IMG/VR virus record: IMGVR_UViG_3300027963_000035
Coordinates: 124,001-188,000 of that record
Strand: one strand, 5' to 3'
Length of the DNA stretch: 64,000 nucleotides
The translations under genes were made by a program, and so were the position numbers. Below are positions 22,143 to 38,939 of the stretch, one piece after another. Under the pieces are notes generated by a model. That model had not been told where the DNA came from, did no database searches, and worked only from the letters and a program-made list of their open reading frames with translations. Each line of letters opens with the position of its first letter. Position 1 is the first letter of the stretch.

Positions 22143-22516
22143 AAAACCCTACAGTATCTCAAAAATTATACCCGCCGGATTTTTTTAGAAACCGTTTTTA
22201 GAAAATTATAGGTTTAGTGGGGCGGGTTTAAAGTTAACTCTCATATACTTTGAAAAAATATAGAAACCCCCTTTAAAGTTCATTAAAAAGTTCATGGGTT
22301 GGGAAAAAGAAATATAAAGGGAAAAGAAAAAGGGCGTAATGGCGTTGAACCGGTACCCGTACCAAACCCTACCCCCAGGGTTTTTCAGTTTTAGTTTTTC
22401 AGTTTTTAACTTTGTAAAAATATACCGTACCGAAAACTGTTTTCATTTTTCAAAGAACCGTACCGGATTCTTTCTCACATACCACGAATCCGTACCAGAA
22501 TCCTACCCGCCAGTAA

Positions 22517-22548
22517 TAAGGGGGGAGAGTTTAGCCCCTCCCCCCTTA
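22517..22548 (-). terminator. GC-rich hairpin after gene 22555..23028
   Basis: taaggggggag ... ctcccccctta inverted repeat. Confidence 0.6.
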
Positions 22549-22554
22549 GACAAC

Positions 22555-23028
22555 CTAGACTATCTGCCAATCGCAGACTACCTTGGTTGCCCCCTTGCAA
22601 CTTTGCTTGGGGAGTTGTTTCACCAACTCCCGCTTCACGTTCTCGACGCCCTCTTTGACTTCTGTGACACGATCAAGGATAGACCCTACCGCAGACTCCC
22701 CCTTGACCAACGCCGTTCTAATGCAATCTACGAGCACCCCAGTGGCAAGTGGGCCAGTCTTACGCATGGCAACCAGATCACTACGGGTGATAGTCTCTCC
22801 CTTATCCATGCGACTGATAAGGCTATCCCAAGCAGCACTAGCGGTTTCCTGCCACAGAGCCACCGATTCCAGCCAAGGGATGCTAGTGGTAGCGTCCCTT
22901 TCATAATCGTCGCCAACCTTGACCGTTCCACTGACCCGAACCGTGAAATCAACCGTATGATCCCCAACCGGAATGTTATCCCGGTCGAACTTCACTTTGC
23001 TCAGAGCCAGCATTTGAATGTCGTTCAT
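22555..23028 (-). CDS. hypothetical protein
   Basis: 157 aa, GGAG RBS, promoter motif at about 23070. Confidence 0.75.
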   Translation of the reverse strand: MNDIQMLALSKVKFDRDNIPVGDHTVDFTVRVSGTVKVGDDYERDATTSIPWLESVALWQETASAAWDSLISRMDKGETITRSDLVAMRKTGPLATGVLVDCIRTALVKGESAVGSILDRVTEVKEGVENVKRELVKQLPKQSCKGATKVVCDWQIV

Positions 23029-23085
23029 CTTCTAAACTCCAGAGGGTTGAAGGTTCCTTACACTCAGTAATCGTACCAGATACTA

Positions 23086-23271
23086 TCACCCTGCCATCTT
23101 GATTAGACACTTCAAGGACAGACCATAAAGAAACATCCCCGCACCCGATTCGGGATCAATACCACAAGAAACCATGCTGGCTTCTAATGCGTCTTGGATC
23201 ATTCTCTCTGAAGGATACTTTTTACCCTTCAAGAAGTCTTTGGCCTTAATGGCAATCTCAACAGGAGTCAT
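23086..23271 (-). CDS. hypothetical protein
   Basis: Start MTPVEIA after GGAGA; motif at 23307. Confidence 0.6.
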   Translation of the reverse strand: MTPVEIAIKAKDFLKGKKYPSERMIQDALEASMVSCGIDPESGAGMFLYGLSLKCLIKMAG

Positions 23272-23475
23272 CTGTTTTCTCCAGAGGTTGAAGTTCCTTA
23301 CACTCAACCGTACCAGATTAGAACTTTTCCCGGCGGGTTGCCTTGTTAGCGACCCGCTTGCCAAACTTGCGAAGATGCTTGCAATAACTCATTCCAACCG
23401 CCTTGCCAGCACAACGAGTCTTACGCATTTGAAACTTCCTTTTGGTTAAGGTTACAAACATTAACCGTACCAGAA

Positions 23476-23511
23476 GGAGAGGGGGGAGTTTTTTGTTTCT
23501 CCCCCCTCTCC
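23476..23511 (-). terminator. GC-rich hairpin after HTH paralog
   Basis: ggagaggggggag / ctcccccctctcc. Confidence 0.65.
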
Positions 23512-23516
23512 CCTTT

Positions 23517-23762
23517 TCACTTCCAACCCTTCATTTCCTTGTTGGCAGCGGCCACGATACTTGCCTTGTTCCGGCGAGACTTCAACTCTTTCTTAGTCTT
23601 GGGAACACAAGCACCGTTCTGACGGAGATACTTGAGACGGAGGCAAACCGCTGCCGGAGTGATTCCCAACTCCTTAGCAACACTGGTTTGGTTCCCACCA
23701 TTGTTGAGATGCCGCATGATGACATTGACGAACGTTTCAACGCTAACAGTCTGACGCTTCAT
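23517..23762 (-). CDS. small sigma-region-4-like HTH protein (paralog 1)
   Basis: VSVETFV..GGNQTSVAKELGITPAAVCLRLKYLR; motif at 23811. Confidence 0.75.
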   Translation of the reverse strand: MKRQTVSVETFVNVIMRHLNNGGNQTSVAKELGITPAAVCLRLKYLRQNGACVPKTKKELKSRRNKASIVAAANKEMKGWK

Positions 23763-23935
23763 GGTTTTGGTTCCTTATGGTTATGGTTATGGTTCAATCA
23801 ACGATAATCTACCGTACTAGTTTTCTTCTTCCGTTGGATCATAGTTACATTCATCCTCTGCATCTTCATTGTCATAACTTGGATCGTCAATCCAAGGCCA
23901 GAGGACTGTTTCTTGCATCATATCAAAGTCATCCA

Positions 23936-24124
23936 TTAGACTCTCCTTTGAGTGTTGGGTTCACAACCATCCACCGTACTGAATACTTCAACAGCGACCA
24001 GATGGGGAAGGTATCCTTTCAGAATCTCTTTGAACTCAACCTTGCCGAACTTTTCGACCGCCTCTTTATGAGTCAAGACTATTGTTTTACCCGTGTCACA
24101 ACAGGTTACTTCATACTTCTTCAT
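23936..24124 (-). CDS. hypothetical protein
   Basis: RBS and motif at 24157; reads through the motif at 23973. Confidence 0.6.
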   Translation of the reverse strand: MKKYEVTCCDTGKTIVLTHKEAVEKFGKVEFKEILKGYLPHLVAVEVFSTVDGCEPNTQRRV

Positions 24125-24171
24125 GATGAAACTCCCAGAGTTATCGGCAAGAGTTTACCGTACCGAAAGCC

Positions 24172-24384
24172 TCAGATGACCCCCTCCAAGTAGGATTCAA
24201 ACTGGACAAGCAGTTCAATCTTATTATTCTTAGGCTTGATTCCCTTTTCCTGAAGGATTCTTTTCACAATCTGGCTGACGTTGAACCTTGAGTGCTTGAG
24301 TCCCTTAGTCTCCAACTTCAATGCACTCTTGAGACTGAGCAGACGATACTTTTCAACATTCAGGCCAGTGATAACGGTAGTCAT
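24172..24384 (-). CDS. hypothetical protein
   Basis: Start MTTVITG after GAGGA; motif at 24418. Confidence 0.65.
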   Translation of the reverse strand: MTTVITGLNVEKYRLLSLKSALKLETKGLKHSRFNVSQIVKRILQEKGIKPKNNKIELLVQFESYLEGVI

Positions 24385-24434
24385 TTTTAGTCCTCTTTGT
24401 TGATGGAACAAGAGTTTACCGTACCTGATTCATT

Positions 24435-24656
24435 TCAACCAAGATAACGATACTTAGCGTCCTCAACCTTTTCATCAATATTGTAGACGGTCAAACCGAT
24501 GATGTTATGGTCGTTCCACAAAGTTTCAAAAAGATGACTAATCTTTTTGCGGTCAGTATTCTTGATATAACCCTTTTTACCGTCCTTGAACATGATCTCC
24601 AGAATATAACCACTGACCCAAGACAAACCATCGAACCACTTGATGTTCTTGAACAT
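24435..24656 (-). CDS. hypothetical protein
   Basis: Start MFKNIK after AAGGA; motif at 24694. Confidence 0.6.
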   Translation of the reverse strand: MFKNIKWFDGLSWVSGYILEIMFKDGKKGYIKNTDRKKISHLFETLWNDHNIIGLTVYNIDEKVEDAKYRYLG

Positions 24657-24691
24657 TGTTTTTTCCTTTGGGCTAGGGTTAAGACAAGAGT

Positions 24692-24901
24692 TTACCGTAC
24701 TGGATTCCAAAGATTATCTTCCCTGAGTTCCTTACGGAGCAGGGTTGCTTCCTCCAGCAACTTCCTCTGTTCAATGAGGAAGTTCTTTACTGCGGAGTCA
24801 TACTCCCCACTATTTTGGGTATCCAGAATATTCTTCTTAGTCTCCCAAATAAGAGTGCTAAGAGCCCGGTCGATGATGTTTTTTTGCTCTGGGGTCATCA
24901 C
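24692..24901 (-). CDS. hypothetical protein
   Basis: AGGAG RBS, motif at 24922; ends VR-stop inside the next motif. Confidence 0.6.
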   Translation of the reverse strand: MMTPEQKNIIDRALSTLIWETKKNILDTQNSGEYDSAVKNFLIEQRKLLEEATLLRKELREDNLWNPVR

Positions 24902-25219
24902 TTTTCTCCTTTTGGTTTTTTACCGTACCAAAAACATAAAGTTTAACCCTAGATTTAACTAGGGTTGTTGCTTTTAACACTAGCCAGTTCACCGTATAGG
25001 TTAACTGCAAGATACAGTGCTTCTCTCTTGTTAGCAGCCCATACATACCCGACAACGCCGACTCGCCAGTAAACTTCCCATTCAGTAAGCATGGTATTGG
25101 CTCCGTGGTTAATGGTTCACACCCAATCTACGTACCAAAAACTAAAAAGAAAAATCCCCCGATCATAATGAAAACTCTACGCTTAGCGTGGAATCACCAA
25201 TATGATCGGGGGAGAGTCT

Positions 25220-25624
25220 TTATTCTGCCCCTAGTGCCACTTTCACGGCATTGACCATTTGACCATAGAAACTACCGGCAAAGTTGCCCCCACACATTTC
25301 TGCTAGTTCCCGCTGAAATGCGGTTGGGGTCATTCCGCCCTTACGATTACCCTCTCTGTAGACCGTAGCCTTAGCCTTTACTTTCACAAAGTCCAGTTTG
25401 TGATTCTGACGCTCTACGGTGCGATCTGGAGCCGTAATACTAAAAGTGCCTCTTCCGGCCCGATTAGTATAAACAACCCGCCAGACTTGATCCTCGCTCG
25501 CCTTGGAGTGTCGGATGGTTCCCTTTACCATCAAGCCACCAACACGGCGAAACTCTGTGCCGTTTTCTGTCTCAAAAGGATAGAACTTGATTGGCTTGGG
25601 TTCATCAACGATTTGCCACGGCAT
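25220..25624 (-). CDS. hypothetical protein
   Basis: 134 aa, AAGGA RBS, motif at 25661, long hairpin downstream (25155-25213). Confidence 0.7.
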   Translation of the reverse strand: MPWQIVDEPKPIKFYPFETENGTEFRRVGGLMVKGTIRHSKASEDQVWRVVYTNRAGRGTFSITAPDRTVERQNHKLDFVKVKAKATVYREGNRKGGMTPTAFQRELAEMCGGNFAGSFYGQMVNAVKVALGAE

Positions 25625-25691
25625 TGTCTGATTCCTTAGTGGTGTTGGTTACAACTATAACCCGTACTAGATACTATCCCCGTAGGGATCA

Positions 25692-25907
25692 TCAACCCGT
25701 GATGACACTCAGCACTTCATCGTTGAGCGGGTTGATTACCGGATCGAACTCGACCGGAACTTCAACTTCACGCTGATTCTGGATGATGTTGACAATCGCA
25801 TTGACCAGAACCCGCTCGTTGACAGTGTAGTGACCCCGATTGTGAATCTCCTTTGAGGCTTCCATGTCCTTGAGCAACTTCAGGCGACGAGTCTTAGTAA
25901 CTTTCAT
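25692..25907 (-). CDS. hypothetical protein
   Basis: AGGAG RBS, motif at about 25943. Confidence 0.65.
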   Translation of the reverse strand: MKVTKTRRLKLLKDMEASKEIHNRGHYTVNERVLVNAIVNIIQNQREVEVPVEFDPVINPLNDEVLSVITG

Positions 25908-25955
25908 CTCTAACTCCTGAGAAGTGGAGGGAACAACACTAACCCGTACCGGATT

Positions 25956-26234
25956 CTAGTCATGCCTCTTGATTCGATAGTTCATGCCGCCCTCGACCAG
26001 CAGATTCCATCCGTAGGAATCCAATGAATCAATCAACTCCTCAAATACAAGACGATCCGGCAGGAGTGATAACATGATCTTCGGTCCATTGACCTTGCCG
26101 ATGAGCCAGTGTACCGCCCGTTCACGGTCGAATGCCGCCACCCTTTCGGGGTCGAACCGATGGATGAAGGTGCATGGGAACGGCTCTTCTCCGAACCGCT
26201 GAACCAGATCATCAATAGTGGTTTCTAACGCCAT
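25956..26234 (-). CDS. hypothetical protein
   Basis: AAGGA RBS, motif at 26266. Confidence 0.65.
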   Translation of the reverse strand: MALETTIDDLVQRFGEEPFPCTFIHRFDPERVAAFDRERAVHWLIGKVNGPKIMLSLLPDRLVFEELIDSLDSYGWNLLVEGGMNYRIKRHD

Positions 26235-26278
26235 GATTTCCTTTCGTTTCGGGTAACAACTCCCGACCGTACCGGATT

Positions 26279-26479
26279 CTAGTTGATTTCTAGAATATCT
26301 ACCCTCAAACCATCCTTATGGTAACTCTCACCCCTAGAATATCGGGGGAGGGTTGAATGAGTTACTGACGGGTCAAACTTAATAATCCAATCGTCCGCAC
26401 AACCCACTGCATCATAGTAGTTGTCGAAACTGGTAACACTCTCAGGAACACTGTCACGAATGACCATTGCAAGCCACAT
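26279..26479 (-). CDS. hypothetical protein
   Basis: AGGAG RBS, motif at 26502. Confidence 0.65.
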   Translation of the reverse strand: MWLAMVIRDSVPESVTSFDNYYDAVGCADDWIIKFDPSVTHSTLPRYSRGESYHKDGLRVDILEIN

Positions 26480-26515
26480 TTGGATTCTCCTTTGAAGTTT
26501 TACCGTACCAAATCT

Positions 26516-26722
26516 TTATGATTTGAACTGTCGGTCTTTGCTCATAATCCTGTTAACGGCAGCCCAACTCCACTGAAAACTCTTTGGGCCGTTCAACTGA
26601 GCCACAGTAGGAAACTTCTCAAGGAAGCCCACGATTTTAGCGGGCTCCCCATCAAGCCAGCAAGCATTGTCGTTCTTCCACTGTTCAACAGCAAACTCAT
26701 GATCCTCGATTGTGCTTCTCAT
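26516..26722 (-). CDS. hypothetical protein
   Basis: AGGA RBS, motif at 26769. Confidence 0.65.
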   Translation of the reverse strand: MRSTIEDHEFAVEQWKNDNACWLDGEPAKIVGFLEKFPTVAQLNGPKSFQWSWAAVNRIMSKDRQFKS

Positions 26723-26780
26723 TTTTAATCCTAGTTATTAAAAGTAAAAGTAAGGCTCACAAGTCTTTACCGTACCAAAA

Positions 26781-26827
26781 TCGACCGCTAGGATTGAACC
26801 TAGTGAATCCCCAAACGGGACGGTCGA
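26781..26827 (-). ncRNA. truncated tRNA-like element (acceptor stem, one hairpin, T arm)
   Basis: TCGACCG TCCC GTTTG GGGA TTCA CTAGG TTCAAT CCTAG CGGTCGA. Confidence 0.45.
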
Positions 26828-26990
26828 AGATTGTTTAGCGTGGGTTGTTATTATCAATGATAATAGAAATAATACCGCTACACAATCCAAGGAAGCACAT
26901 CATTTGAAGACTCTTCAGGTATTCACAACCAGTCAGATTCCCGGCTTCGACCAGGAACCAGAAACCGTACCCATGGGAAACCCCGTGGGC

Positions 26991-27026: not shown

Positions 27027-27037
27027 TGTGACTAACT

Positions 27038-27396: not shown

Positions 27397-27660
27397 TTAC
27401 CGATTATGACAACGGAAACCGTCTCTCCGTGTCATATTTGCTTCAATCTCCCTAAAAAGATCCCTCATAGCCAGATAGTTCTTAAACTCTGGCTCCTTTT
27501 CAAACTGTGTAGCGGCTTCGATAAGGCTTGAAACCGGCTTCACAGTCTCCCTTGCGTAATAATCTTCAAGGAAACCAAGAGTGTATCGGTCAAGACCACT
27601 ACTGGTTTTTGTATCGTCTGGCATTTTTTCTCTCCAGAAACCGTAAAAACTGTTTTCCAT
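27397..27660 (-). CDS. hypothetical protein (predicted leaderless)
   Basis: ATG 8 nt after TACGGA. Confidence 0.65.
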   Translation of the reverse strand: MENSFYGFWREKMPDDTKTSSGLDRYTLGFLEDYYARETVKPVSSLIEAATQFEKEPEFKNYLAMRDLFREIEANMTRRDGFRCHNR

Positions 27661-27871
27661 ATCTCTGCTCCGTACTAAAAACTAATCTTCGGGGTGAGGG
27701 CCGGGAACACCGTTGAAAAACGGGTTTGGCATCCAAACATCATAATCAGTTAAAATCCATTGACGTTCTGGATGTTCGGCCCCAACATGAAGTGCGTATT
27801 CCCGCATTGCATCAATAGGTTTTGCAAGTTCATCTGGCATCAATCGTCTCCTTTTTTATTGGAACGATAGT

Positions 27872-28078
27872 CTACCGTACCGAAAAGTCACTCTCACACC
27901 AGCCCATAGCCTCCGCCATGTCCTTCTTTATTCCCGGGATCGTCCAAACATTGGCTTCCTGCCTTGATGCTTGCCAACCCTTGAAGGGAACATATCGGAG
28001 TTGATACACAATATCTCCCTCTTTTGCTTCGTAATACGGCTTTGTATTATACCGATTCTTTTTCTTTTGCCAAAGCAT
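27872..28078 (-). CDS. hypothetical protein
   Basis: GAGGAG RBS; ends SVR-stop inside the motif. Confidence 0.6.
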   Translation of the reverse strand: MLWQKKKNRYNTKPYYEAKEGDIVYQLRYVPFKGWQASRQEANVWTIPGIKKDMAEAMGWCESDFSVR

Positions 28079-28444: not shown

Positions 28445-28476
28445 TGTTATTTCTCCTCTGTTGCCTATTCACCGTA

Positions 28477-28785
28477 CTAAATCAGATTCCGGCCCTTCAG
28501 CCATTCATAGACAACACCGCTGGCGTTGTTGATCTTCATATTATCATTCTGGCAGTCGTTAATAAGGTTGATTAACAATACCCTATTGATATTAACGCCC
28601 TTAACGGGAAGATGCCACCAATCCCCAATATCACAAAACTCCAGTCTAAGGTATTCTAATACCTTGTCCCGATAGTTTTTCCTTGAGGCAAGATCGTGTT
28701 TATTGTATCCCTTGTGGGCGTCGTGACCCTTCACGTTCTTAGTCCCCCACCAATCTTCATAGAATCCATCGTAGAAGTCGTTCAT
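28477..28785 (-). CDS. hypothetical protein
   Basis: AGGAG RBS; TAG stop overlaps the motif at 28471. Confidence 0.65.
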   Translation of the reverse strand: MNDFYDGFYEDWWGTKNVKGHDAHKGYNKHDLASRKNYRDKVLEYLRLEFCDIGDWWHLPVKGVNINRVLLINLINDCQNDNMKINNASGVVYEWLKGRNLI

Positions 28786-29025: not shown

Positions 29026-29059
29026 CTTTATTACTCTTTAGTGATGTTAGGACAAATCT

Positions 29060-29242
29060 TTACCGTACCAAAATCTGACGGAGTTCATCAGAGAGAGTTT
29101 TTTCTCGCTCCAGAGTTTCAACAATACTACCCAGCCTCATGCTAATGAAGTTGAGAGTATCAGGCTCAACCATACCCTGACTATTCAGGGGAGCAGTATC
29201 CACAAAAATCCTGAGCATCTTGAGAGTATCAATGGTATCCAT
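29060..29242 (-). CDS. hypothetical protein
   Basis: AAGGA RBS; ends LVR-stop in the motif. Confidence 0.55.
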   Translation of the reverse strand: MDTIDTLKMLRIFVDTAPLNSQGMVEPDTLNFISMRLGSIVETLEREKTLSDELRQILVR

Positions 29243-29575: not shown

Positions 29576-29749
29576 CTAGAAACTTTCAAATGCGTCCCAG
29601 AATCCCACCTTATTGCCGTTAGAGTCTTTGAGAACCCCATCATCCCCTGCTTTAATGTTAGAGGGGATTTGAGTTAGAATCTCACCCAGTTCGTTGGGGT
29701 TATCATTAAAACTAGCGTTGTCCATGTTCACTTCAATAATGATTTTCAT
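29576..29749 (-). CDS. hypothetical protein (predicted leaderless)
   Basis: MKIIIEVNMDNASF..DSNGNKVG, 57 aa, ATG 8 nt after TACGGT at 29758; below ORF-track cutoff. Confidence 0.6.
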   Translation of the reverse strand: MKIIIEVNMDNASFNDNPNELGEILTQIPSNIKAGDDGVLKDSNGNKVGFWDAFESF

Positions 29750-29763
29750 ATTTATTCACCGTA

Positions 29764-29988
29764 CTAAAAAGGATAATCTTCGGGCCACTCTTGACTCTGA
29801 CTATATATTTCCATTTCATCATAGTGGGCATTGAGTTCTGGATCATTAGTAAGTTCAACATAATGACCCCGTTCACAAACGATGTTACGCTTCTCCAGAA
29901 TCTTATAGATGATTCTTTCGGCGTTAGTAAGATCGGCAACGCTAATGCCGATGATAGCCCGTGCGATTTGTTCCAGTTCAGTGTTCAT
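29764..29988 (-). CDS. hypothetical protein
   Basis: AGGAG RBS, motif at 30013. Confidence 0.65.
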   Translation of the reverse strand: MNTELEQIARAIIGISVADLTNAERIIYKILEKRNIVCERGHYVELTNDPELNAHYDEMEIYSQSQEWPEDYPF

Positions 29989-30228
29989 CTTTTGCTCCTT
30001 GGGTAAGGTGGAACCGTACTAGATGTTATTGAACTCTGTGCTAAGATACTTCATATCTTCACCGCACTTTTCGCATACCGGGGTTCCGGCATCTTCATAC
30101 CACCACGGAGTAACATGAGTAACACAATCACAATCTGCACAACGCCAAACGTGACGGAGTTTAGTATCGTCGATAACAGTCCAGTTTTCCATTTTATTCT
30201 CCTTGAGTAAGTTGGAACCGTACCAGAA

Positions 30229-30531
30229 TCAACGAATCGTGTTGTTGGGCGTCTGACAAATCATAATCTGCTGCTGAGATTGTGAGGACTGATTTACCAC
30301 AGCAATCTCCATAGAGCCTTGCTGATTGACCCTGCACCAATATGTTCCGGTAGAATCACTCCAATACCGGTAGTTATTATCATAGCCCCTATAGACATTG
30401 TATTGGGGTTCAACACGATGATACTTCCTTGCCTCCACAATCGTATGAACAACAGGGGCGGCTTCCTTACCACACTGGAGACAAGCAACAAGTAATCCAA
30501 CAACTAAACTGGCAATCTGAAGGTAAAACAT
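30229..30531 (-). CDS. hypothetical protein with signal/TM segment
   Basis: Hydrophobic N-terminus, motif at 30574. Confidence 0.65.
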   Translation of the reverse strand: MFYLQIASLVVGLLVACLQCGKEAAPVVHTIVEARKYHRVEPQYNVYRGYDNNYRYWSDSTGTYWCRVNQQGSMEIAVVNQSSQSQQQIMICQTPNNTIR

Positions 30532-30595
30532 TTTCTAATCCTTTGAAGAATGTTTGTTTCGGAACAACCCACAACCGTACCAAAATCAACTATCT

Positions 30596-30898: not shown

Positions 30899-30938
30899 GT
30901 TATCTTCCTTTATTGTCTTTCACACAACCGTACCAAAA

Positions 30939-31142
30939 TCAACTATCCTTTAGACATTCCCTGATCATTTGGATTAGATTAGAAGCGTCACCCAAAGCCG
31001 CAGATTCAAAATCATTTTCAAGATTTTCAGCGACATTATCAAGGATTGTCTCGATATTTCGTAGTGCAATAGCAGTATCCTTTGACGATACAGGCCAGTC
31101 AATACCAAGAGCCTCTGCTATTTGTTTCTTGGTTATTCTCAT
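30939..31142 (-). CDS. hypothetical protein
   Basis: AAGGA RBS. Confidence 0.6.
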   Translation of the reverse strand: MRITKKQIAEALGIDWPVSSKDTAIALRNIETILDNVAENLENDFESAALGDASNLIQMIRECLKDS

Positions 31143-31266: not shown

Positions 31267-31516
31267 CGATAGTTTCACAAATAGTGTCCGGTATCACGCA
31301 CTATTCAACCTTATTTAGGTTTCTATCCGACCCCTGACGCATTTATATTGAATCTGTGCCGGGAATCCAACCCGGATAGAGAGCAGCATAAGCCTCACCA
31401 TAGCCTAGTTCGGCAACCCCATACACCCATTAGATGCAGACGCTGTTTGCTGGGCTATCTCTCTACTGTCGGCAGACACACAGTTTGTATCTCGTTGACT
31501 CCACACCGTACCAAAA

Positions 31517-31795
31517 TCAATCGTTCTCGTATATGCCCTTAGTATATTCTTTTGGAATGATTGGACACCAACCTTTAGCCTTTTCATTATCATAAGGCAT
31601 CCAGAATGGAGCATCACAAGCGTCTACTACTCCGAACTTATTATTCACAAAGATATGAGGACAAAGTTTAGTCCCCTTTATTTCACGTTCTTCATAATGG
31701 TATTTGCCAATACCGATCCCAATATTAGGGCCGAAGTAATAAACTTCCTGATCCTTTTCTGGAGGGAAGTTATGACTGCTTTTCCATGTGTTCAT
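31517..31795 (-). CDS. hypothetical protein (predicted leaderless)
   Basis: ATG 8 nt after TACGGT at 31804. Confidence 0.65.
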   Translation of the reverse strand: MNTWKSSHNFPPEKDQEVYYFGPNIGIGIGKYHYEEREIKGTKLCPHIFVNNKFGVVDACDAPFWMPYDNEKAKGWCPIIPKEYTKGIYEND

Positions 31796-31801
31796 GTTTT
31801 T

Positions 31802-32011
31802 CTACCGTACCGAATACAGACTGGCGATTGTTTCACCGTCAAAGTTTTTGTTTAATTCTTTTATATACTTCTCGGCTGATTCTTTATTCTGCCATTTAAC
31901 TACAAATGGCTTTTGGTGAATATCACCTTTATCGGTAACTGGCTTGTGATCCTTATAAACCACAAACCAGCGGCCTTCTTCTTTCACAGAATAGTTATTT
32001 GATCGTTTCAT
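31802..32011 (-). CDS. hypothetical protein
   Basis: Follows tRNA-Glu; ends SVR-stop in the motif. Confidence 0.55.
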   Translation of the reverse strand: MKRSNNYSVKEEGRWFVVYKDHKPVTDKGDIHQKPFVVKWQNKESAEKYIKELNKNFDGETIASLYSVR

Positions 32012-32095: not shown

Positions 32096-32136
32096 ATGGT
32101 TGTTTACCGTACCAAAAACAATATAGTCTATAACAA

Positions 32137-32461: not shown

Positions 32462-32571
32462 AGTAGTAATCTCCTGCGTTATTCAACCCTTTGTTGCCGT
32501 TTGCCGAAGTGGCTCACCGTCGCAACGTCCATCAACCGTACCAAAAGACAAGTTTCTCTGTTTATTTCTTT

Positions 32572-33247: not shown

Positions 33248-33441
33248 TTTTTCTATCCTTTCGTTACTACTCTACCGTACCAAAAACTATCGGGCCGTTT
33301 CTTCCTTAACTGTTTCCATGACAATTAAATTTTCATCATAAGGAAGATTATCCAAAAAATTATGTAATTTTTCTGGATTTTCATATGGGTCGTATTTGAT
33401 TTGCCCTTGTTCATAGTAAATGTGAACGTAAAACATTACTA

Positions 33442-34004: not shown

Positions 34005-34127
34005 CTTCTTCCTCAAGAGGGAGGTCGGGAAACTCCAACCGTACCAGAAACTATGTGGTTGAGAGAATGATTTAATGCGTTGATTGGTATATATAATACA
34101 TATAACCAAAAATCAAAAGGAGTATAT

Positions 34128-34664: not shown

Positions 34665-35120
34665 ATGAGTGCAACAACATCACAAGGCACAGGTTTAGGA
34701 ATGGCCCCTAACCAAGTTTGTTTAACAGCCGCTGGCCCTCACATTGTCGCTGCTGGCATTGCCAGAACAGGAACTGTAGGATCAGACGGACAAACTAACA
34801 ATTGGTGGATCACAGTTGATTTAGAAGAAGTATTACCTTTAAATCCAGATATGTATAGTGTTATACTAACACAATGCGACGAAGAAGGTGCTTTACAAGG
34901 CGAGAATGGTCAAAGACCAAACCACGGCCCTCACGTTGAAAAATACGTTAAGGTCAATGGAACTCGTTATAACAAGTATGGTATTGACGATGAGTTCGAT
35001 AACTATGATAACTGGAAGAACAATGGTTTAGCTGGTTTCGTTATTCACTCAGGTGACGGCGATCCACACACCATGCAATACGTTGTAGTAAGAAATGGTT
35101 TCTTAAGACTAAGTAACTAA
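34665..35120 (+). CDS. hypothetical protein, possibly structural
   Basis: AAGGAG RBS, followed by a terminator. Confidence 0.7.
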   Translation: MSATTSQGTGLGMAPNQVCLTAAGPHIVAAGIARTGTVGSDGQTNNWWITVDLEEVLPLNPDMYSVILTQCDEEGALQGENGQRPNHGPHVEKYVKVNGTRYNKYGIDDEFDNYDNWKNNGLAGFVIHSGDGDPHTMQYVVVRNGFLRLSN

Positions 35121-35148
35121 TAATTTAACTAAAAACACATTCGGTGTT

Positions 35149-35178
35149 AACCCCAAGACTAACCTCTTGGGGTTTTTT
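35149..35178 (+). terminator. intrinsic terminator between convergent genes
   Basis: aaccccaag / cttggggtt followed by a T run. Confidence 0.75.
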
Positions 35179-35407
35179 ATTGTACCAAACCCTTTTGTAT
35201 CTGCCAATTCTTATGCTCCATAACAACGTCGATATTATTACGAAGTAGATTATCAGGAGCAGTATCACAATACAAACTAATCATCTCGAGAATATCGTCT
35301 AAACTATTCTTGAGAATATTATCTTGAGTTAAACTCTTTGAATAAGAAAGTTTACTGGCGATCTTGCAAAAGAGTATGGCCTGTTCCTTATCCATAAGAT
35401 TCACCAT
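35177..35407 (-). CDS. hypothetical protein
   Basis: 76 aa, coupled to HTH paralog 4. Confidence 0.55.
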   Translation of the reverse strand: MVNLMDKEQAILFCKIASKLSYSKSLTQDNILKNSLDDILEMISLYCDTAPDNLLRNNIDVVMEHKNWQIQKGLVQ

Positions 35408-35631
35408 TGTGGCACAGGGGCTCCCTTAGCCCGGAGTTTATGACAACGCTGCCTTACTGCTTGAGGAGAGATCCCCAATTCATTTGCAACACTAATACTG
35501 TTTCCGCCATTCTTAACGGCTTCTACAATACTCTTGAGGAAAACGTCAAGGGGGATTCTCTTATTCTTCTTCTGAGTGGCTTCAGTTTCACCACCAAGAA
35601 TGAAATCACTAAAGTCAATATCGTCTAGCAT
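35401..35631 (-). CDS. small sigma-region-4-like HTH protein (paralog 4)
   Basis: IPLDVFL..GGNSISVANELGISPQAVRQRCHKLR; motif at 35659. Confidence 0.75.
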   Translation of the reverse strand: MLDDIDFSDFILGGETEATQKKNKRIPLDVFLKSIVEAVKNGGNSISVANELGISPQAVRQRCHKLRAKGAPVPQW

Positions 35632-35847
35632 CTAGAGTTCTCCGTGTGACACCCTCACACCGTACCAGATTCTACCGTTCTCTCTACCCAGATTTCACAA
35701 CCAAACTTCATTCTGGCGAATCTATTTGCGTCCCATTCGCTATAAGCAGATACATACCCTGCTATTCGGTTGTTCTTCCAAACAATCCAAGTATATTTTT
35801 CCATAATACCTCTATTATAATCTAATAGAGGATATTGGTCAATACAT

Positions 35848-36201
35848 TTAAACACCACTCTTAAGAGCCCGATTAGTAGCAATCTTCACACCCAGTTTAC
35901 GATTAAACATTCCGCCTGCTGGAACATTAAACTTACCCCTCAGATCACGACCATCAGGAGTAGTAATCTCCACAATAGTAAAGCCGCCCTTGCAACTGAG
36001 TTCCCAGTTCACACTTTGAACTAAGTTGTTAAATTGTTCATATTCACGCTTGCTCATATATTCGTGAATAATTTCTGGAGAGTTAGCATGATCCGGAGTA
36101 ACACAACGGAGATAAACCCGTCCGTGATAAACACGAACCTTATAACCAGTCTTACGAAGAACTTCTACGTTTGGCATTTCAATTTTAGTCAAGGTAGTCA
36201 T
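35848..36201 (-). CDS. hypothetical protein
   Basis: 117 aa, AAGGA RBS. Confidence 0.65.
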   Translation of the reverse strand: MTTLTKIEMPNVEVLRKTGYKVRVYHGRVYLRCVTPDHANSPEIIHEYMSKREYEQFNNLVQSVNWELSCKGGFTIVEITTPDGRDLRGKFNVPAGGMFNRKLGVKIATNRALKSGV

Positions 36202-36216
36202 AATTAAATTTCCTTT

Positions 36217-36441
36217 TTACCAGGGGCGGGCAGGGTCACGACGAAGAATTTTTTTCTTCTTCTTATAAAAAGCCTTAGTCTCTGATTCAACTTGTTCTTT
36301 GAACTCTTTGATTCTAGATCGTAAATCTGCGACTTTTTCACTAAATGTAAGTGTCGAAGTTTCAAAGTCCTTGCTAATCTTGTTAAGTGGAGGCATACCA
36401 CTAACAAATTTGTGCCACCAATTAGAATGTTGATCACTCAT
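36217..36441 (-). CDS. hypothetical protein
   Basis: TAATG overlap with the upstream gene. Confidence 0.55.
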   Translation of the reverse strand: MSDQHSNWWHKFVSGMPPLNKISKDFETSTLTFSEKVADLRSRIKEFKEQVESETKAFYKKKKKILRRDPARPW

Positions 36442-36761
36442 TAAAGATCCCTCTTTCTTTTAACATCCTCAACAGTATGATTATACTCTATTCCACTTTC
36501 TCGGCAATATCTGCTGATGGGATAGTATCCACTAAAACGTCCATAACCATTATCAACAAGCCACTTACCGGCATTGTATGACCATTGATCCCCATACCCA
36601 TAAGTGAAAGGAATCTTATGAACCAAATGGTCATTTACCCAAATTTCAACGGTATGGTAGGTATTACCATAAGAGCGTTGAAACCATCGACGAGCATGAA
36701 GATAAATTTTCTTAACTTCAACAAAACTGGTGAGGAGTTTTTCTTTTTGGATTGTTTCCAT
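36441..36761 (-). CDS. conserved phage protein (predicted leaderless)
   Basis: RWF....GNTYH.V....YGYG; ATG 8 nt after TACGGT at 36770. Confidence 0.7.
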   Translation of the reverse strand: METIQKEKLLTSFVEVKKIYLHARRWFQRSYGNTYHTVEIWVNDHLVHKIPFTYGYGDQWSYNAGKWLVDNGYGRFSGYYPISRYCRESGIEYNHTVEDVKRKRDL

Positions 36762-36809
36762 GCTCACTCACCGTACCAGAGGGAAAGAAAATTTTTACTA
36801 TTTTAGGAT

Positions 36810-37421
36810 ATGGATCCTGCTTCAAAATACCCAAATCAATATGATTTATGTTCCTGTGGTAAACACAAAACAATCTTGTCTAAACATTGTATCAAATGCT
36901 GCAATAATGGTCAAATAAAATATCTAACAATCAAAGATGCGATGGTATCAGCACTGCATGGACAAAGTGCAAAATTTAATGTTGTCAGAAACAGAGCCAG
37001 GGTTCAATATAGGAATATAAAGTGTCAATTTTGCGGATACGATAAACACGTTGAAGTTTGTCACATTAAACCAATCCACTCATTCCCAGAAGAAACTTTA
37101 ATATCTGAGGTGAATGACCAGTCTAATATTTTAATTCTTTGTCCCAATTGTCATTGGGAGTTTGACAAAAAGAATCAAAAACCTAGAAAAGAAAAAATAA
37201 AAAAACAAAGACCAAGGAAGGTTGAATGGCCCACAAAAGAATTACTAAAAAAACTTGTATGGGAAATGCCAACCATTCAAATTGCTAAACAATATGGAGT
37301 ATCTGATAAAGCTGTTGGTAAATGGGTAAAGAAATATAATCTAACCAAACCACCAAGAGGATATTGGAGAAAAAACAAAGAGTGCGACCCCTGGGAATCG
37401 AACCCAGAACCCCAAAATTAA
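36810..37421 (+). CDS. HNH endonuclease with C-terminal HTH
   Basis: CQFCGY...VEVCHIKPI...N...LCPNCHWEFD; IAKQYGVSDKAVGKW. Confidence 0.9.
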   Translation: MDPASKYPNQYDLCSCGKHKTILSKHCIKCCNNGQIKYLTIKDAMVSALHGQSAKFNVVRNRARVQYRNIKCQFCGYDKHVEVCHIKPIHSFPEETLISEVNDQSNILILCPNCHWEFDKKNQKPRKEKIKKQRPRKVEWPTKELLKKLVWEMPTIQIAKQYGVSDKAVGKWVKKYNLTKPPRGYWRKNKECDPWESNPEPQN

Positions 37422-37455
37422 AAGTTTCGTGCTCTGCCAATTGAGCTAGGGTCGC
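37383..37455 (-). tRNA. trnK: tRNA-Lys(UUU)
   Basis: GCGACCC/GGGTCGC acceptor, GCTC/GAGC D stem, CT TTT AA loop, CTGGG TTCGATT CCCAG. Confidence 0.92.
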
Positions 37456-37511
37456 CCGACTTAATCAACAACAAAACACTACCGTACCAGAAACAAACTT
37501 TTCGTCAACCC

Positions 37512-37543
37512 CTCCCCTCCCCCACATTAAAGGGGGAGGGGAG
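37512..37543 (-). terminator. GC hairpin after HTH paralog
   Basis: ctcccctccccc / gggggaggggag. Confidence 0.65.
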
Positions 37544-37556
37544 AAGATTAAATCCT

Positions 37557-37811
37557 TCACTCAACCCCAAGCGAGGCAAGGATAGCCGCTGCCCGTTCAG
37601 CGGTGTTGCTAGTCCGACCACCACCCTCAAAGCGGGGGATATTCAGACCATGCTTCTTCCGCAACTGCGAAAGACGCACCGAAACCGAACCGGCCACAAT
37701 GCCCAGTTCGTTCGCAACATCTTCAACACTACCGCCAGCCCGCTGCGTCTCGATGACACAGGTGAGGAAACGCTCCAGCGACACACCAGCCTGACCCTTA
37801 GCACGACCCAT
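37557..37811 (-). CDS. small sigma-region-4-like HTH protein (paralog 5)
   Basis: MGRAKGQAG..GGSVEDVANELGIVAGSVSVRLSQLRKK; motif at 37877. Confidence 0.8.
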   Translation of the reverse strand: MGRAKGQAGVSLERFLTCVIETQRAGGSVEDVANELGIVAGSVSVRLSQLRKKHGLNIPRFEGGGRTSNTAERAAAILASLGVE

Positions 37812-37894
37812 AGTATTAAACTCCCTCTTTAACAACCCTTTCTTCCAGACTCACGTTGAATCGGGAACAACCACCAACCGTACCAAAAGGAAAC

Positions 37895-38380
37895 TTACTT
37901 CTTTCTTAAACTACCTAAAAACCTGTCTTTGACACTATAAAGAACTTTTTCGTAATCTTTAATGAAAACTTCAATTTGATCGTGTTCACCTGGTGCTGAT
38001 ACATCCATACTCACATAATCCTCGCCCTGCATACCCTGTTCACTATAGTCTACTGCGTTGAGTCCCTTTTTACTGAAACCTAAATCAATAAGACTTTTCT
38101 TAAAGGTAGTCAGCCAAAGTTTATCGGTATAAATCAAACCATGCTTTTCAACATTCCAAGTTTTCTTGGAAAAATACGCCCTTAATTCAAAACAATCATC
38201 GTGTCCTTCGTAAGTGTTCAAATCAAGTTCGATTATCTTCACAAAGTCTTTAACTACACCACTCCAATAACCGCTACCTTCAGTAGAGGTGACTAGACTC
38301 ACTTTACGAATATAATGATAACAATCTGGACGCACTTTAAGGCCAGTTTCAATCCAGTCAGGACGAGGATTAATCTTCAT
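37895..38380 (-). CDS. conserved phage protein
   Basis: G.GYWS...EL..YF...W....HGLIYTD...DYSEQGMQG..YVS. Confidence 0.7.
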   Translation of the reverse strand: MKINPRPDWIETGLKVRPDCYHYIRKVSLVTSTEGSGYWSGVVKDFVKIIELDLNTYEGHDDCFELRAYFSKKTWNVEKHGLIYTDKLWLTTFKKSLIDLGFSKKGLNAVDYSEQGMQGEDYVSMDVSAPGEHDQIEVFIKDYEKVLYSVKDRFLGSLRKK

Positions 38381-38585
38381 CGTAATCATTCTCCGGTGGA
38401 AACAAGTTGTCGAAACAGGTTCCACAAGTCTGACTAATCATCAATTCCCGATCATCTGCACTAAGATGGGGAAACAAGTCTTGAATAAAACCTTGTCCCA
38501 TACTCCACTTCACATATGTGGAGGGATCAACACTAATAAGTTTCTTCACACCGCAGAGTCGGCAGGAGATACTAATGTTTTGCAT
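38370..38585 (-). CDS. small zinc-ribbon protein (predicted leaderless)
   Basis: CxxC ... IQD.FP.LS...RE..IS..CxxC; ATG 8 nt after TACGCT. Confidence 0.7.
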   Translation of the reverse strand: MQNISISCRLCGVKKLISVDPSTYVKWSMGQGFIQDLFPHLSADDRELMISQTCGTCFDNLFPPENDYDED

Positions 38586-38612
38586 GGTCAAAAAGCGTAC
38601 CAGAGGGAAACT

Positions 38613-38903
38613 CTAGACTTTAAAAGGAGGAGTTGAACAAGAGGGATTACCAGTGTGTGAAAAACTAGTCTTAAAACACCCCTCATTAAAATGCTTCTGG
38701 TATTCCTCGTTAAACAGGATCTGGTAAGCCAAACCACCAAACTCTGCAATTTCTTTCAGACGCTTGAGGTTCTGTTCACCATTACGCCAGACCCTATTAT
38801 CGTCGCTCCAACTGTAATACCAGTCGTGATTCTCTAGGAGAGTCTTGTATTCAGCGAGTTTCTGGTCGAAACTGGCAAGCATACTGTTTTTACTAGTTTC
38901 CAT
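38613..38903 (-). CDS. hypothetical protein (predicted leaderless)
   Basis: HDWYY..SDD..VW..G pattern; ATG 8 nt after TACGGT at 38912. Confidence 0.7.
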   Translation of the reverse strand: METSKNSMLASFDQKLAEYKTLLENHDWYYSWSDDNRVWRNGEQNLKRLKEIAEFGGLAYQILFNEEYQKHFNEGCFKTSFSHTGNPSCSTPPFKV

Positions 38904-38939
38904 GACAAGAGACCGTACCAAAAAGAAAAGAAGAAACCT

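What the first reader, a model, noticed from the sequence alone, without database searches (positions are those of the whole stretch)
22356..38921. A ~45-copy phage-specific promoter regulon (TYYRG-TACGGT) driving an array of small genes and tRNAs
Seen: the motif recurs every 200-500 bp, always on the minus strand and nearly always just upstream of a gene or tRNA. Four more copies lie at 51268, 53199, 58036 and 62954, and I saw no intergenic copy in the first 22 kb. Exactly 8 nt after the hexamer there is usually a pyrimidine/purine step (TT|GT, TC|GT, C|A, T|A). A subset has an upstream GTTTCC extension, and I saw no consistent TTGACA-type -35. Inference: the hexamer sits at -14..-9 of a fixed start site, which fits neither sigma70 (-12..-7) nor sigma54 (-24/-12) geometry. 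It would be read by a phage RNA polymerase, a phage sigma factor or a remodelled host holoenzyme, and would define an early host-takeover region.
Basis: partly seen in the sequence, partly recalled or inferred. Interest (0 to 1): 0.9.

Follow-up and report, generated by a model that had tools for sequence, protein, structure and literature searches.

The report
Jumbo-phage early promoter regulon
An uncultured 251-kb freshwater phage puts the same short DNA signal (GGTACGGT, start site 9 bases later) in front of about 60 early genes and tRNAs; this is a real, clean, lineage-specific promoter set of a familiar kind, but I could not identify the enzyme that reads it.

Summary
TACGGT occurs 56 times against 13 expected. 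The full pattern T-YYRG-TACGGT-N7-YR occurs 30 times against 0.03 expected. A weight matrix finds 45 sites, all on the minus strand.

The window is bases 124,001-188,000 of a 251,265-bp phage contig. In the 158.6 kb I could place, there are 62 sites, and every one points the same way as the gene after it.

The start site is well supported in silico. A pyrimidine/purine step lies exactly 8/9 nt after the hexamer. Nine ATGs begin exactly on that purine (seven open ORFs of at least 40 aa). No ATG opening such an ORF lies at +1 to +10. One tRNA begins 2 nt after it.

There are two sub-classes: a short form in the dense array, and a long form with a GTTTCC box elsewhere. A 187-kb relative uses the same architecture with TACGCT.

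Promoters coincide with mosaic junctions between strains, as in T4 PeSLs.

The "fits neither sigma-70" claim is overstated. TACGGT is TAnnnT, and a start 9 nt after a -10 element is the rrnB P1 geometry.

Verdict: a new member of a known kind, of moderate interest.

The parts
22415..38930 (-). Dense array: 41 class A promoters (median spacing 310 nt) before small ORFs and 3 tRNAs; G+C 41-48% against 29-34% for most of the rest
22415..22442 (-). promoter (-27..+1), TACGGT; first of 3 tandem copies; about 410-nt untranslated stretch, then 434-aa ORF 22001-20697
   Evidence: 23.6 bits
22448..22475 (-). promoter, TACGGT, tandem copy 2
   Evidence: 18.4 bits
22480..22507 (-). promoter, variant TACGGA, tandem copy 3
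   Evidence: 17.0 bits
23061..23088 (-). promoter, variant TACGAT; 33-nt leader to ORF 23028-22555 (157 aa)
23298..23325 (-). promoter; 27-nt leader to ORF 23271-23086; G+C hairpin 23333-23357 just upstream
23455..23482 (-). promoter; 27-nt leader; long G+C hairpin 23476-23514 just upstream
23802..23829 (-). promoter (AGTACGGT); ORF 23762-23517
23964..23991 (-). promoter (AGTACGGT); ORF 23936-23817
24148..24175 (-). promoter; ORF 24124-23936
24409..24436 (-). promoter; ORF 24384-24172
24685..24712 (-). promoter; ORF 24656-24435
24913..24940 (-). promoter; ORF 24898-24692; hairpin 24945-24966 just upstream
25120..25147 (-). weak variant (TACGTA); ORF 25092-24955; doubtful
   Evidence: 12.5 bits
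25652..25679 (-). promoter, variant TACGGG; ORF 25624-25220 (134 aa)
25934..25961 (-). promoter, variant TACGGG; ORF 25907-25692
26257..26284 (-). promoter; ORF 26234-25956
26493..26520 (-). promoter; 14-nt leader; ORF 26479-26279
26760..26787 (-). promoter; ORF 26722-26516
26955..26982 (-). weak copy without the YR step and without a following ORF; doubtful
   Evidence: 10.3 bits
27368..27395 (-). promoter; about 65-nt leader to the first of 3 paralogous small G+C-rich ORFs (27307-27038), possibly HTH
27660..27687 (-). promoter, variant TACGGA; leaderless: ATG of ORF 27660-27397 starts at +1
27865..27892 (-). promoter; ORF 27840-27682
28462..28489 (-). promoter (AGTACGGT); ORF 28444-28124
29053..29080 (-). 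promoter; ORF 29025-28813
29749..29776 (-). promoter; leaderless ORF 29749-29576
30004..30031 (-). promoter; ORF 29988-29764
30208..30235 (-). promoter; ORF 30192-30019
30565..30592 (-). promoter; ORF 30531-30229
30918..30945 (-). promoter; ORF 30898-30596
31496..31523 (-). promoter; no ORF; tRNA-Leu(UAA) 31267-31187 lies 229 nt downstream
31795..31822 (-). promoter; leaderless ORF 31795-31517
32097..32124 (-). promoter; tRNA-Glu 32095-32023 begins 2 nt after +1; strong terminator 32146-32175 just upstream
32526..32553 (-). promoter; second paralogous small ORF 32461-32207
33265..33292 (-). promoter; ORF 33247-32885
34029..34056 (-). promoter that restarts minus-strand transcription after a plus-strand island (34080-35120); ORF 34004-33651
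35650..35677 (-). promoter; ORF 35631-35401
36761..36788 (-). promoter; leaderless ORF 36761-36441; strain mosaic junction at 36776
37472..37499 (-). promoter; tRNA-Lys 37455-37382 begins 17 nt after +1; TTGACG lies 16 nt upstream of the hexamer; mosaic junction at 37469
37868..37895 (-). long-form promoter (GTTTCC box); third paralogous small ORF 37811-37557
38585..38612 (-). long-form promoter, variant TACGCT (the relative's form); leaderless ORF 38585-38370
38903..38930 (-). promoter; leaderless ORF 38903-38613
51259..51286 (-). long-form promoter; 11-nt leader; ORF 51248-51045
53190..53217 (-). long-form promoter with a perfect TTGACA 16 nt upstream of the hexamer; ORF 53156-52953
58027..58054 (-). 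long-form promoter; ORF 57969-57637
62945..62972 (-). long-form promoter; ORF 62898-62206 (230 aa)

Best explanation
The motif is the promoter of the phage's pre-replicative ('early') gene class. Consensus: (A)GTTTCC-YT-YYGG-TACGGT, then 7 unconstrained bases, then Y(-1) R(+1). The conserved block spans -27..-9 and transcription starts on the purine 9 nt after the hexamer. About one transcript in eight is leaderless (AUG at +1); the rest have 11-65-nt leaders with a Shine-Dalgarno sequence, or are tRNA precursors. All copies drive one strand of a block of about 101 kb (contig 146.4-247.5 kb). The window holds the far end of that block, where small ORFs each have their own short-form promoter. 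Larger enzyme genes further upstream use the long form with the GTTTCC box. Shown in silico: position, polarity, start site, conservation and lineage specificity. Inferred: the signal is read by a multisubunit RNA polymerase, most simply the host core enzyme with a sigma-70-family factor. That enzyme would use TGG-TACGGT as an extended -10-like element (T, A and last T of TAnnnT kept), need no -35, and start 9 nt downstream as at rrnB P1, a geometry that favours fast promoter escape. The GTTTCC box at -26..-21 would be a second contact, either for the same holoenzyme or for a phage DNA-binding protein, as the MotA box is at T4 middle promoters. This would give two tiers of early expression. 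The repeated promoters also act as recombination points that swap gene cassettes between strains.
For: Enrichment and absolute strand bias. There are 62 co-oriented sites in 158.6 kb and none in the structural region 83-146 kb, apart from one that is also co-oriented with its gene. Start site: Y 54/61 and R 59/61 at fixed distance; 9 ATGs (7 with an ORF of at least 40 aa) exactly at +1 and no ORF-opening ATG at +1..+10; tRNA-Glu starts 2 nt after +1. Several copies sit directly after terminator hairpins, and terminator-like sites are enriched, 26 against 13.9 +/- 4.2. The same architecture and spacing occur in a 187-kb relative with TACGCT: 30 sites, none on the other strand. The block evolves more slowly than its flanks between strains: 1.1% (core 0.4%) against 2.8-3.0%. 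Multisubunit and sigma-70-like reading: Y-1/R+1, +1 is G or A, TAnnnT pattern, TG two bases upstream in about half of copies, four long-form copies have T[TA]GA[CG][AG] exactly 16 nt upstream, and the position that differs between lineages is the 5th of the hexamer. Nine-base spacing is documented for rrnB P1 (PMC7822876). No phage RNAP was found in about 82% of the genome (and the Pfam tables). Mosaic junctions at promoters: 4 of 7 in the array and 4-5 of 31 orthologous sites.
Against: There are no transcript data, so the start site is inferred. C-G-G in the middle of the hexamer and the G at the 'n' of TGn are invariant, which ordinary sigma-70 recognition does not require. Six copies change the last T (TACGGA, TACGGG) or another base yet keep a correctly spaced gene, one of them leaderless. 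Sigma-70 needs that T. The conserved block runs contiguously to -27, where sigma-70 holoenzymes normally read nothing. All roughly 30 copies in the relative share the G-to-C change, which looks like co-evolution with a dedicated reader, although homogenisation by recombination could also do it. About 45 kb of the genome (contig 1-45,246) was never seen, the host is unknown, and canonical sigma-70-like promoters are not enriched in the array.
Confidence: 0.55

Rival explanations
1. The sites are the same promoters with the same start sites, but they are read by a phage-encoded RNA polymerase or a dedicated phage specificity factor. This would be delivered with the DNA or made very early. It would be encoded in the unseen 45 kb or be too divergent for Pfam and phmmer. 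The parallel is phiKZ/AR9 virion RNAPs or N4.
For: The architecture is a long, nearly invariant contiguous block, a fixed unconstrained spacer and a conserved start. It parallels the AR9 early promoter AAATATATATTAT-N6-G+1 read by a virion RNAP (PMC5312081). There is a concerted TACGGT to TACGCT change between lineages. The hexamer centre is invariant and the last T can be lost. There is no general -35. The phage belongs to a very divergent huge-phage clade in which many large proteins have no match.
Against: There is no beta/beta' homologue, no DFDGD-type motif and no RpoB/RpoC hit in about 206 kb of this genome, nor in about 4 Mb of loci from related contigs. The remaining 45 kb must also hold the DNA polymerase and other replication genes, and probably some head and tail genes, since none of these could be identified in what was read. 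+1 is G or A with Y at -1, which does not point to a T7-like enzyme. The only transcription gene found in the clade is a sigma-70-family factor, which implies use of the host core enzyme.
Confidence: 0.25
2. The motif acts in RNA, as a recognition site for an endoribonuclease that cuts 9 nt downstream. Long polycistronic early transcripts would be processed into monocistronic, sometimes leaderless, mRNAs and tRNA precursors.
For: The strand specificity, the intergenic position before every gene, the fixed distance to a 5' end and the ATG at that end would all be produced by precise cleavage too. YYG-GUA-CGG can form a 3-bp stem in which C/U alternation keeps G-C or G-U pairs.
Against: Several sites lie directly after intrinsic-terminator hairpins, so little read-through RNA would reach them. 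One site restarts the strand after a plus-strand island. Three copies sit in tandem 32-33 nt apart. The A variant at -16 breaks the inner pair of the putative stem. The stem has only 3 bp. The Y-1/R+1 rule and a T-rich upstream flank are DNA-level start-site features.
Confidence: 0.07
3. The sites are protein-binding or recombination sites without promoter activity of their own. They could be 'stoperator'-like repressor sites, as in mycobacteriophage L5, or pure cassette-exchange sequences.
For: It is an asymmetric motif with one orientation relative to transcription and an intergenic location. Junctions of strain-specific segments fall on it. The array encodes several small HTH-type proteins.
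Against: A binding site alone does not explain the conserved YR step at a fixed distance, the ATG spike at exactly that purine, the empty +1..+10 zone, or the position right after terminators. No integrase or repressor module was seen.
Confidence: 0.05

Closest known systems
T4-type early promoters and PeSL cassettes (promoter-early stem-loop; PMC2839356, PMC4122927)
   Same: Dozens of near-identical early promoters, each before a small ORF of unknown function, lie in a hyperplastic region. Some are paired with an upstream terminator hairpin. Insertions and replacements between close strains begin or end at the promoter.
   Different: T4 early promoters are strong canonical sigma-70 promoters with -35 and -10 elements. 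Here there is no -35, the hexamer is TACGGT, and the start is 9 nt downstream rather than 7. Only a minority of copies (about 5 of 39) have the stem-loop. No T4 gp55/gp45/gp44/gp46/gp47 homologue was found.
Early promoters of phiKZ-like jumbo phages, e.g. AR9 AAATATATATTAT-N6-G+1 (PMC5312081)
   Same: A jumbo phage has a long, highly conserved contiguous element, a fixed spacer and a conserved start nucleotide. There are about 40 copies and they were found by over-representation.
   Different: Those elements are A+T-rich and are read by a virion multisubunit RNAP whose genes are recognisable. Here the core is G+C-rich, the spacer is 7+1 nt, many transcripts are leaderless (AR9 UTRs are 26-491 nt), and no RNAP genes were found in 82% of the genome.
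T4 middle promoters (MotA box at -30 plus a sigma-70 -10 element, no -35)
   Same: The long form combines a TAnnnT-type hexamer with a second conserved box upstream in place of a -35. This parallel rests on my own knowledge of T4 and on the T4 background summarised in PMC5780444.
   Different: The box is GTTTCC at -26..-21 and is contiguous with the hexamer block, not centred at -30. No MotA or AsiA homologue is known here. This is a functional analogy only.
E. coli rrnB P1 (PMC7822876)
   Same: The start site is nine bases downstream of the -10-type hexamer. At rrnB P1 this requires a pre-scrunched open complex and speeds promoter escape.
   Different: rrnB P1 has a consensus TATAAT, a -35, an UP element and a G+C-rich discriminator. 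Class A has none of these apart from the spacing.
Mycobacteriophage L5/Bxb1 stoperators (own knowledge)
   Same: About 30 asymmetric 13-bp sites, in one orientation relative to transcription, lie in short intergenic gaps.
   Different: Stoperators are repressor sites of temperate phages and have no fixed distance to a start site or start codon.

Membership tests
sigma-70-type promoter (extended -10 class) | -10 hexamer of form TAnnnT | tested here: met
   TACGGT: T, A and last T are present in 57-61 of 61 sites. However, the middle CGG is invariant, which the family does not require.
sigma-70-type promoter (extended -10 class) | TG two bases upstream of the hexamer (TGn) | tested here: inconclusive
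   G is present in 54/61 and T in 34/61 sites, so TG occurs in about half. The 'n' is always G.
sigma-70-type promoter (extended -10 class) | start 6-9 nt (mode 7) after the hexamer | tested here: inconclusive
   The start is always at 9, the upper edge of the range. This is the rrnB P1 case (PMC7822876).
sigma-70-type promoter (canonical) | -35 TTGACA 16-18 nt upstream | tested here: not met
   No column is conserved. At least 5/6 matches occur in 5 of 62 sites against 0-4 in shifted controls.
sigma-70-type promoter | initiation by a sigma-70-family holoenzyme | not testable with these tools
   This needs in vitro transcription or infection data. The host is unknown.
sigma-54 promoter | GG at -24 and GC at -12, 10 nt apart, with the start about 12 nt after GC | tested here: not met
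   YGGTACG resembles TGGCACG, but the downstream TTGY is 4 nt too far away and the start would lie beyond the leaderless ATGs.
T7-like single-subunit RNAP promoter | contiguous conservation from about -17 through +6, with G at +1 | tested here: not met
   Conservation stops at -9; positions -8..-2 are free; +1 is G 35 and A 24.
T7-like single-subunit RNAP promoter | phage gene for the polymerase | tested here: inconclusive
   None was found in about 206 of 251 kb (Pfam tables). 45 kb was not seen.
phiKZ/AR9-type virion-RNAP early promoter | long invariant element, fixed spacer and conserved start | tested here: met
   compare PMC5312081.
phiKZ/AR9-type virion-RNAP early promoter | A+T-rich element | tested here: not met
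   The core is GGTACGGT.
phiKZ/AR9-type virion-RNAP early promoter | split beta/beta'-like genes in the genome | tested here: inconclusive
   There is no RpoB/RpoC phmmer hit and no DFDGD motif in the fetched 82% or in related loci. The rest was not seen.
PeSL (T4-like promoter-terminator cassette border) | early promoter repeated before small ORFs in a variable region | tested here: met
PeSL (T4-like promoter-terminator cassette border) | adjacent stem-loop terminator in the composite motif | tested here: not met
   Only about 5 of 39 array promoters have a hairpin directly upstream.
PeSL (T4-like promoter-terminator cassette border) | indel and replacement junctions between close relatives fall at the motif | tested here: met
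   Junctions lie at 37469, 36776, 34010 and 32107, which is 4 of 7 in the array. Homology ends at -15..+19 in 4-5 of 31 sites. The sample is small.

The most novel reading that the evidence does not exclude
A widespread clade of uncultured freshwater huge phages runs its whole pre-replicative programme from a private promoter type. There would be two tiers: a short form for a fast-evolving array of small takeover genes, and a long form with a GTTTCC box bound by one of the phage's own small DNA-binding proteins. Leaderless mRNAs would be used routinely. Specificity would have shifted in concert (TACGGT to TACGCT) between sister lineages.
Probability: 0.25. Interest if true: 0.75.

Novelty: new member of a known kind. 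Interest (0 to 1): 0.5.

Why it matters
Huge phages are known almost only from metagenomes, and how they take control of transcription is unknown outside the phiKZ group. Here the regulatory layout can be read from sequence alone:
- about 60 precisely placed start sites;
- a clear split between an early strand and a late, TATATA-marked gene set;
- leaderless messages;
- a promoter whose sequence has shifted between sister lineages.

This gives exact predictions for metatranscriptome 5' ends. It gives a compact 28-bp element to test with purified polymerases. It also gives a marker (GGTACGGT or GGTACGCT at fixed polarity) for annotating early genes and tracking cassette exchange in this clade.

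Tried and rejected
- Cultured relatives: DNA and protein searches against 50,697 phage records gave no close hit.
Contig 1-45,246 was never read.
- Weak Sigma70_r4 hit (3e-5) among the relative's ORFs: I never located it, and it is probably a generic HTH.
- The 1682-aa protein as a possible virion RNAP: no support; it sits in the baseplate module.
- T4-type late promoter TATAAATA: not enriched.
- Host inference: a PfkB query found nothing and MscL gave only about 30% matches to assorted MAGs. The relative's sigma is nearest to Planctomycetes sigmas, and one array ORF matches a Kyanoviridae family. These hints conflict, so the host is left open.
- The four other IMG/VR contigs with one copy of the 18-mer: judged to be chance.
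- Doron et al. 2016 (Syn9 promoters): could not be read.
- N4-like hairpin promoter: rejected, because the stem has only 3 bp.
- ECF-sigma reading: rejected, because there is nothing conserved at -35.

Full report
OBSERVATION. TACGGT occurs 56 times in the window against 13.0 +/- 3.7 in dinucleotide-preserving shuffles, and 50 of these are on the minus strand. Printing the flanks shows a longer signal, tTTYYGG-TACGGT. GGTACGGT is 33 minus and 0 plus. The full pattern T-YYRG-TACGGT-N7-YR has 30 exact matches against 0.03 expected, all on the minus strand. A weight matrix over -24..+2 finds 45 minus-strand sites at 10 bits or more and none on the plus strand. Of these, 41 lie between 22415 and 38930, and the others are at 51277, 53208, 58045 and 62963. 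The first 22 kb has no copy of the extended motif.

WHERE THE WINDOW COMES FROM. The window is 100% identical to bases 124,001-188,000 of JGI contig 3300027963 Ga0209400_1000004, also held as IMGVR_UViG_3300027963_000035 (251,265 bp).
- A 323-kb contig is a 90-99% identical mosaic relative.
- A 187-kb contig is a more distant relative; its DNA ligase is 74% identical at the protein level.
- There is no cultured relative.
- Conserved genes (terminase, a 222-aa structural-module protein and an actin-like protein) tie it to a large clade of uncultured phages with contigs up to 532 kb.
By walking outwards I read contig positions 45-251 kb, partly from near-identical strains. Of that, 158.6 kb from the contig itself could be laid on its coordinates.

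DISTRIBUTION. In those 158.6 kb there are 61 sites on the minus strand and one on the plus strand. The plus-strand site sits 71 nt upstream of a plus-strand gene, so all 62 are co-oriented with the next gene. Fourteen and twenty sites fall in the two 10-kb bins that make up the window's array. One to six per 10 kb continue up to 247.5 kb. There are none from 83 to 146 kb, where the baseplate, fibre-like and glycosyltransferase genes lie, other than that single plus-strand copy.

Genes from window position 22 kb to contig position 247.5 kb are almost all on the minus strand. The first gene after the most upstream promoter pair encodes a 92-aa winged-helix protein. Recognisable products in the block are a GHKL ATPase, DNA and RNA ligases, AAA+/VWA proteins, a PP-loop ATPase and tRNAs. 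This is a pre-replicative gene set. That fits 'early', but the timing itself is not shown.

START SITE. Aligning the 61 minus-strand sites gives G-T-T-T-(C/G)-n-T-T-Y-Y-G-G-T-A-C-G-G-T. Seven positions with little information follow, then pyrimidine in 54/61 and purine in 59/61. I take that purine as +1.
- Nine sites have an ATG whose A is exactly +1, and seven of these open ORFs of at least 40 aa.
- No ATG opening an ORF of at least 40 aa lies at +1..+10 or at -5..-1; the few other ATGs there open none.
- ORF starts with a Shine-Dalgarno sequence resume from +11.
This is the pattern expected of a true 5' end: messages are either leaderless or have a leader long enough for a ribosome-binding site. 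In addition, tRNA-Glu begins 2 nt after its +1 and tRNA-Lys 17 nt after. Several sites lie immediately after G+C hairpins with a T-run (23333-23357, 23476-23514, 24945-24966, 32146-32175). Terminator-like sites are enriched in the array, 26 against 13.9 +/- 4.2. One site (34047) restarts the strand after a plus-strand island.

TWO FORMS. Outside the array, 21 of 22 sites carry GTTTCC (at least 5/6) at -26..-21. Inside the array only 4 of 39 do. The long form precedes larger genes spread along the block. The short form precedes the small ORFs, with a median spacing of 310 nt.

RELATIVES. The 187-kb relative has at least 30 distinct sites, all on one strand. Their consensus is aAGTTTCCTCCCGGTACGCT-N7-T-G. 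The block, spacing and YR step are the same, but the fifth hexamer base is C instead of G in every copy. The retrieval pattern favoured the long form. A 125-kb contig shares this variant. One copy in the window (38603) already has TACGCT.

Between the window's genome and the 323-kb strain, substitutions are 1.1% in the block and 0.4% in GGTACGGT. They are 2.8% in the upstream flank and 3.0% at -8..-2. Homology between the two strains breaks at promoters. Junctions at 37469, 36776, 34010 and 32107 are 4 of the 7 in the array, where about 10% would be expected by chance. In addition, 4-5 of 31 orthologous sites have an alignment end between -15 and +19. This is the behaviour described for T4-type PeSLs (PMC2839356, PMC4122927), although only about 5 of 39 copies here have the stem-loop half.

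WHO READS IT.
- Sigma-54 is excluded by spacing and by the leaderless ATGs.
- A T7-like enzyme is unlikely, because conservation stops at -9 and +1 is G or A.
TACGGT retains T, A and the final T of TAnnnT. TG lies two bases upstream in about half of the copies. Four long-form copies have TTGACA, TTGACG, TAGACA or TTGAGA exactly 16 nt upstream, although -35-like matches are not enriched overall. A start nine bases after the -10 element is the documented geometry of E. coli rrnB P1, where it needs a scrunched open complex and speeds escape (PMC7822876).
- Against a plain host sigma-70 reading: CGG and the G before the hexamer are invariant; conservation is contiguous to -27; six working-looking copies lack the final T or another hexamer base; and the hexamer change in the relative is concerted.

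I looked for a phage enzyme. Pfam annotations and scans covering contig 45-251 kb show no RNAP or sigma domain. phmmer with E. coli RpoB, RpoC, RpoD and RpoE, and with T4 gp55, gp45, gp44, gp46 and gp47, finds nothing in this genome. No DFDGD-type motif occurs in any fetched locus of the clade.

The same search did find a 288-aa sigma-70-family protein in the 187-kb relative (L034:18619-19485). It matches RpoD regions 2 and 4 with E 2e-15. It has a family of phage homologues, and its nearest cellular relatives are Planctomycetes sigmas. It lies inside an operon driven by a class A promoter. A profile of its family finds no copy in the fetched parts of this genome. None of the listed homologue clusters sits on a 251-kb or 323-kb contig.

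My ranking is: host core enzyme with a sigma-70-type reading, 0.55; an unseen phage polymerase or specificity factor, 0.25; RNA-processing sites, 0.07; binding or recombination sites without promoter activity, 0.05.

SECOND PROMOTER CLASS. Genes without class A, which include structural genes and the plus-strand islands, are preceded by TATATA. It is 10.8-fold enriched, in 28 of 137 upstream regions. It often lies 3-8 nt from the ATG and in divergent gaps. This is probably the late class and suggests further leaderless or near-leaderless messages. Canonical sigma-70-like promoters are not enriched in the array, 47 against 37.6 +/- 7.1.

COMPARISON AND NOVELTY. Conserved private promoters before early genes are a classic phage feature: T4, T5, SPO1, N4, and phiKZ/AR9 (AR9: AAATATATATTAT-N6-G+1, 41 copies; PMC5312081). 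What is new here is the sequence, the G+C-rich core, the uniform 9-nt start distance, the short and long forms, and the frequent leaderless starts. It is also new that it belongs to an uncultured huge-phage clade with no recognisable polymerase. I file it as a new member of a known kind.

LIMITS. There is no transcript evidence. The host is unknown. Contig positions 1-45,246 were not read. Gene calls are my own simple ORF picks, apart from the JGI calls. The mosaic statistics rest on few junctions. The relative's site set is biased by the search pattern.

Noticed in passing
window 20281-20554 (-), next to tRNA-Thr 20566-20638: A group I intron (Rfam RF00028, 68.6 bits, E 8e-16, at 20338-20530) interrupts a long-variable-arm tRNA in its anticodon loop. 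The anticodon assignment depends on the exact splice sites (Leu, Ser or Sec-like).
   Followed up: partly
contig-wide; in the window e.g. upstream of 15917(-), 15988(+), 17408(-), 17433(+), 18009(-), 18359(+), 43040(-), 45839(-), 46800(-), 61878(-): A second motif class, (a/c)aTATATA(a/t), is 10.8-fold enriched before genes that lack class A. It is often 3-8 nt from the ATG and shared by divergent gene pairs. It is probably the late promoter and suggests more leaderless or near-leaderless mRNAs.
   Followed up: partly
window 27038-27395, 32207-32553, 37557-37895 (-): Three paralogous cassettes, each with a class A promoter, a leader of about 65 nt and an 84-89-aa G+C-rich ORF. Mean column identity of the DNA alignment is 82%. 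Several weak HTH-family Pfam hits among the array ORFs, which I could not assign to particular members, may belong to them. They are candidate regulators.
   Followed up: partly
window 22001-39000 against the rest: The promoter array has 41-48% G+C, while most of the window has 29-34%. The phage tRNAs read A/U-rich codons (Thr-UGU, Leu-UAA, Glu-UUC, Lys-UUU). Early genes may be tuned to the host tRNA pool, or they may be of foreign origin.
   Followed up: no
window 22000-22415 (-): Three tandem promoters (starts 22480, 22448, 22415) feed about 410 nt without an ORF. This stretch holds a 14-nt direct repeat (22380-22406) and a further GGTACGGG copy at 22363. The 434-aa ORF 22001-20697 follows, with no family match. 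It could be a long leader or a small RNA.
   Followed up: no
window 34080-35120 (+): A plus-strand island of two ORFs (171 and 151 aa) with a terminator at 35149-35174 is absent from the 323-kb strain, where 153 nt replace 1126 nt. It looks like an inserted mobile module.
   Followed up: no
L156:10001-11056 (+), contig 65.2-66.3 kb, outside the window: A 351-aa protein matches Pfam PF25216 'Volactin' (actin-like) over its full length, E 6e-63. It is 64-77% identical across at least 133 IMG/VR contigs up to 532 kb. It appears to be a conserved actin homologue of this huge-phage clade.
   Followed up: no
L034:18619-19485 (+) = L051:4514-5380, 187-kb relative: A sigma-70-family gene (288 aa, regions 2 and 4) lies inside the relative's early block. 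Phage homologues occur on contigs up to 357 kb, and the nearest cellular relatives are Planctomycetes sigmas. No copy was detected in the window's genome.
   Followed up: yes
window array ORFs (member not identified): One array ORF matches Pfam Kyano_Gp96, a T4-like cyanophage family, at E 4e-26, and another matches DUF7717 at E 4e-18. A 994-aa structural protein upstream of the window shares a domain with S-PM2 and S-SKS1 virion proteins.
   Followed up: no
L018:1856-3022 (-), L018:7669-8913 (-), 323-kb relative: The Pfam survey gave two hits to the TnpB family (OrfB_IS605 plus Cas12f1-like TNB). They most likely belong to these two ORFs of 388 and 414 aa, which lie in stretches of the 323-kb strain that do not align to the window's genome.
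   Followed up: no
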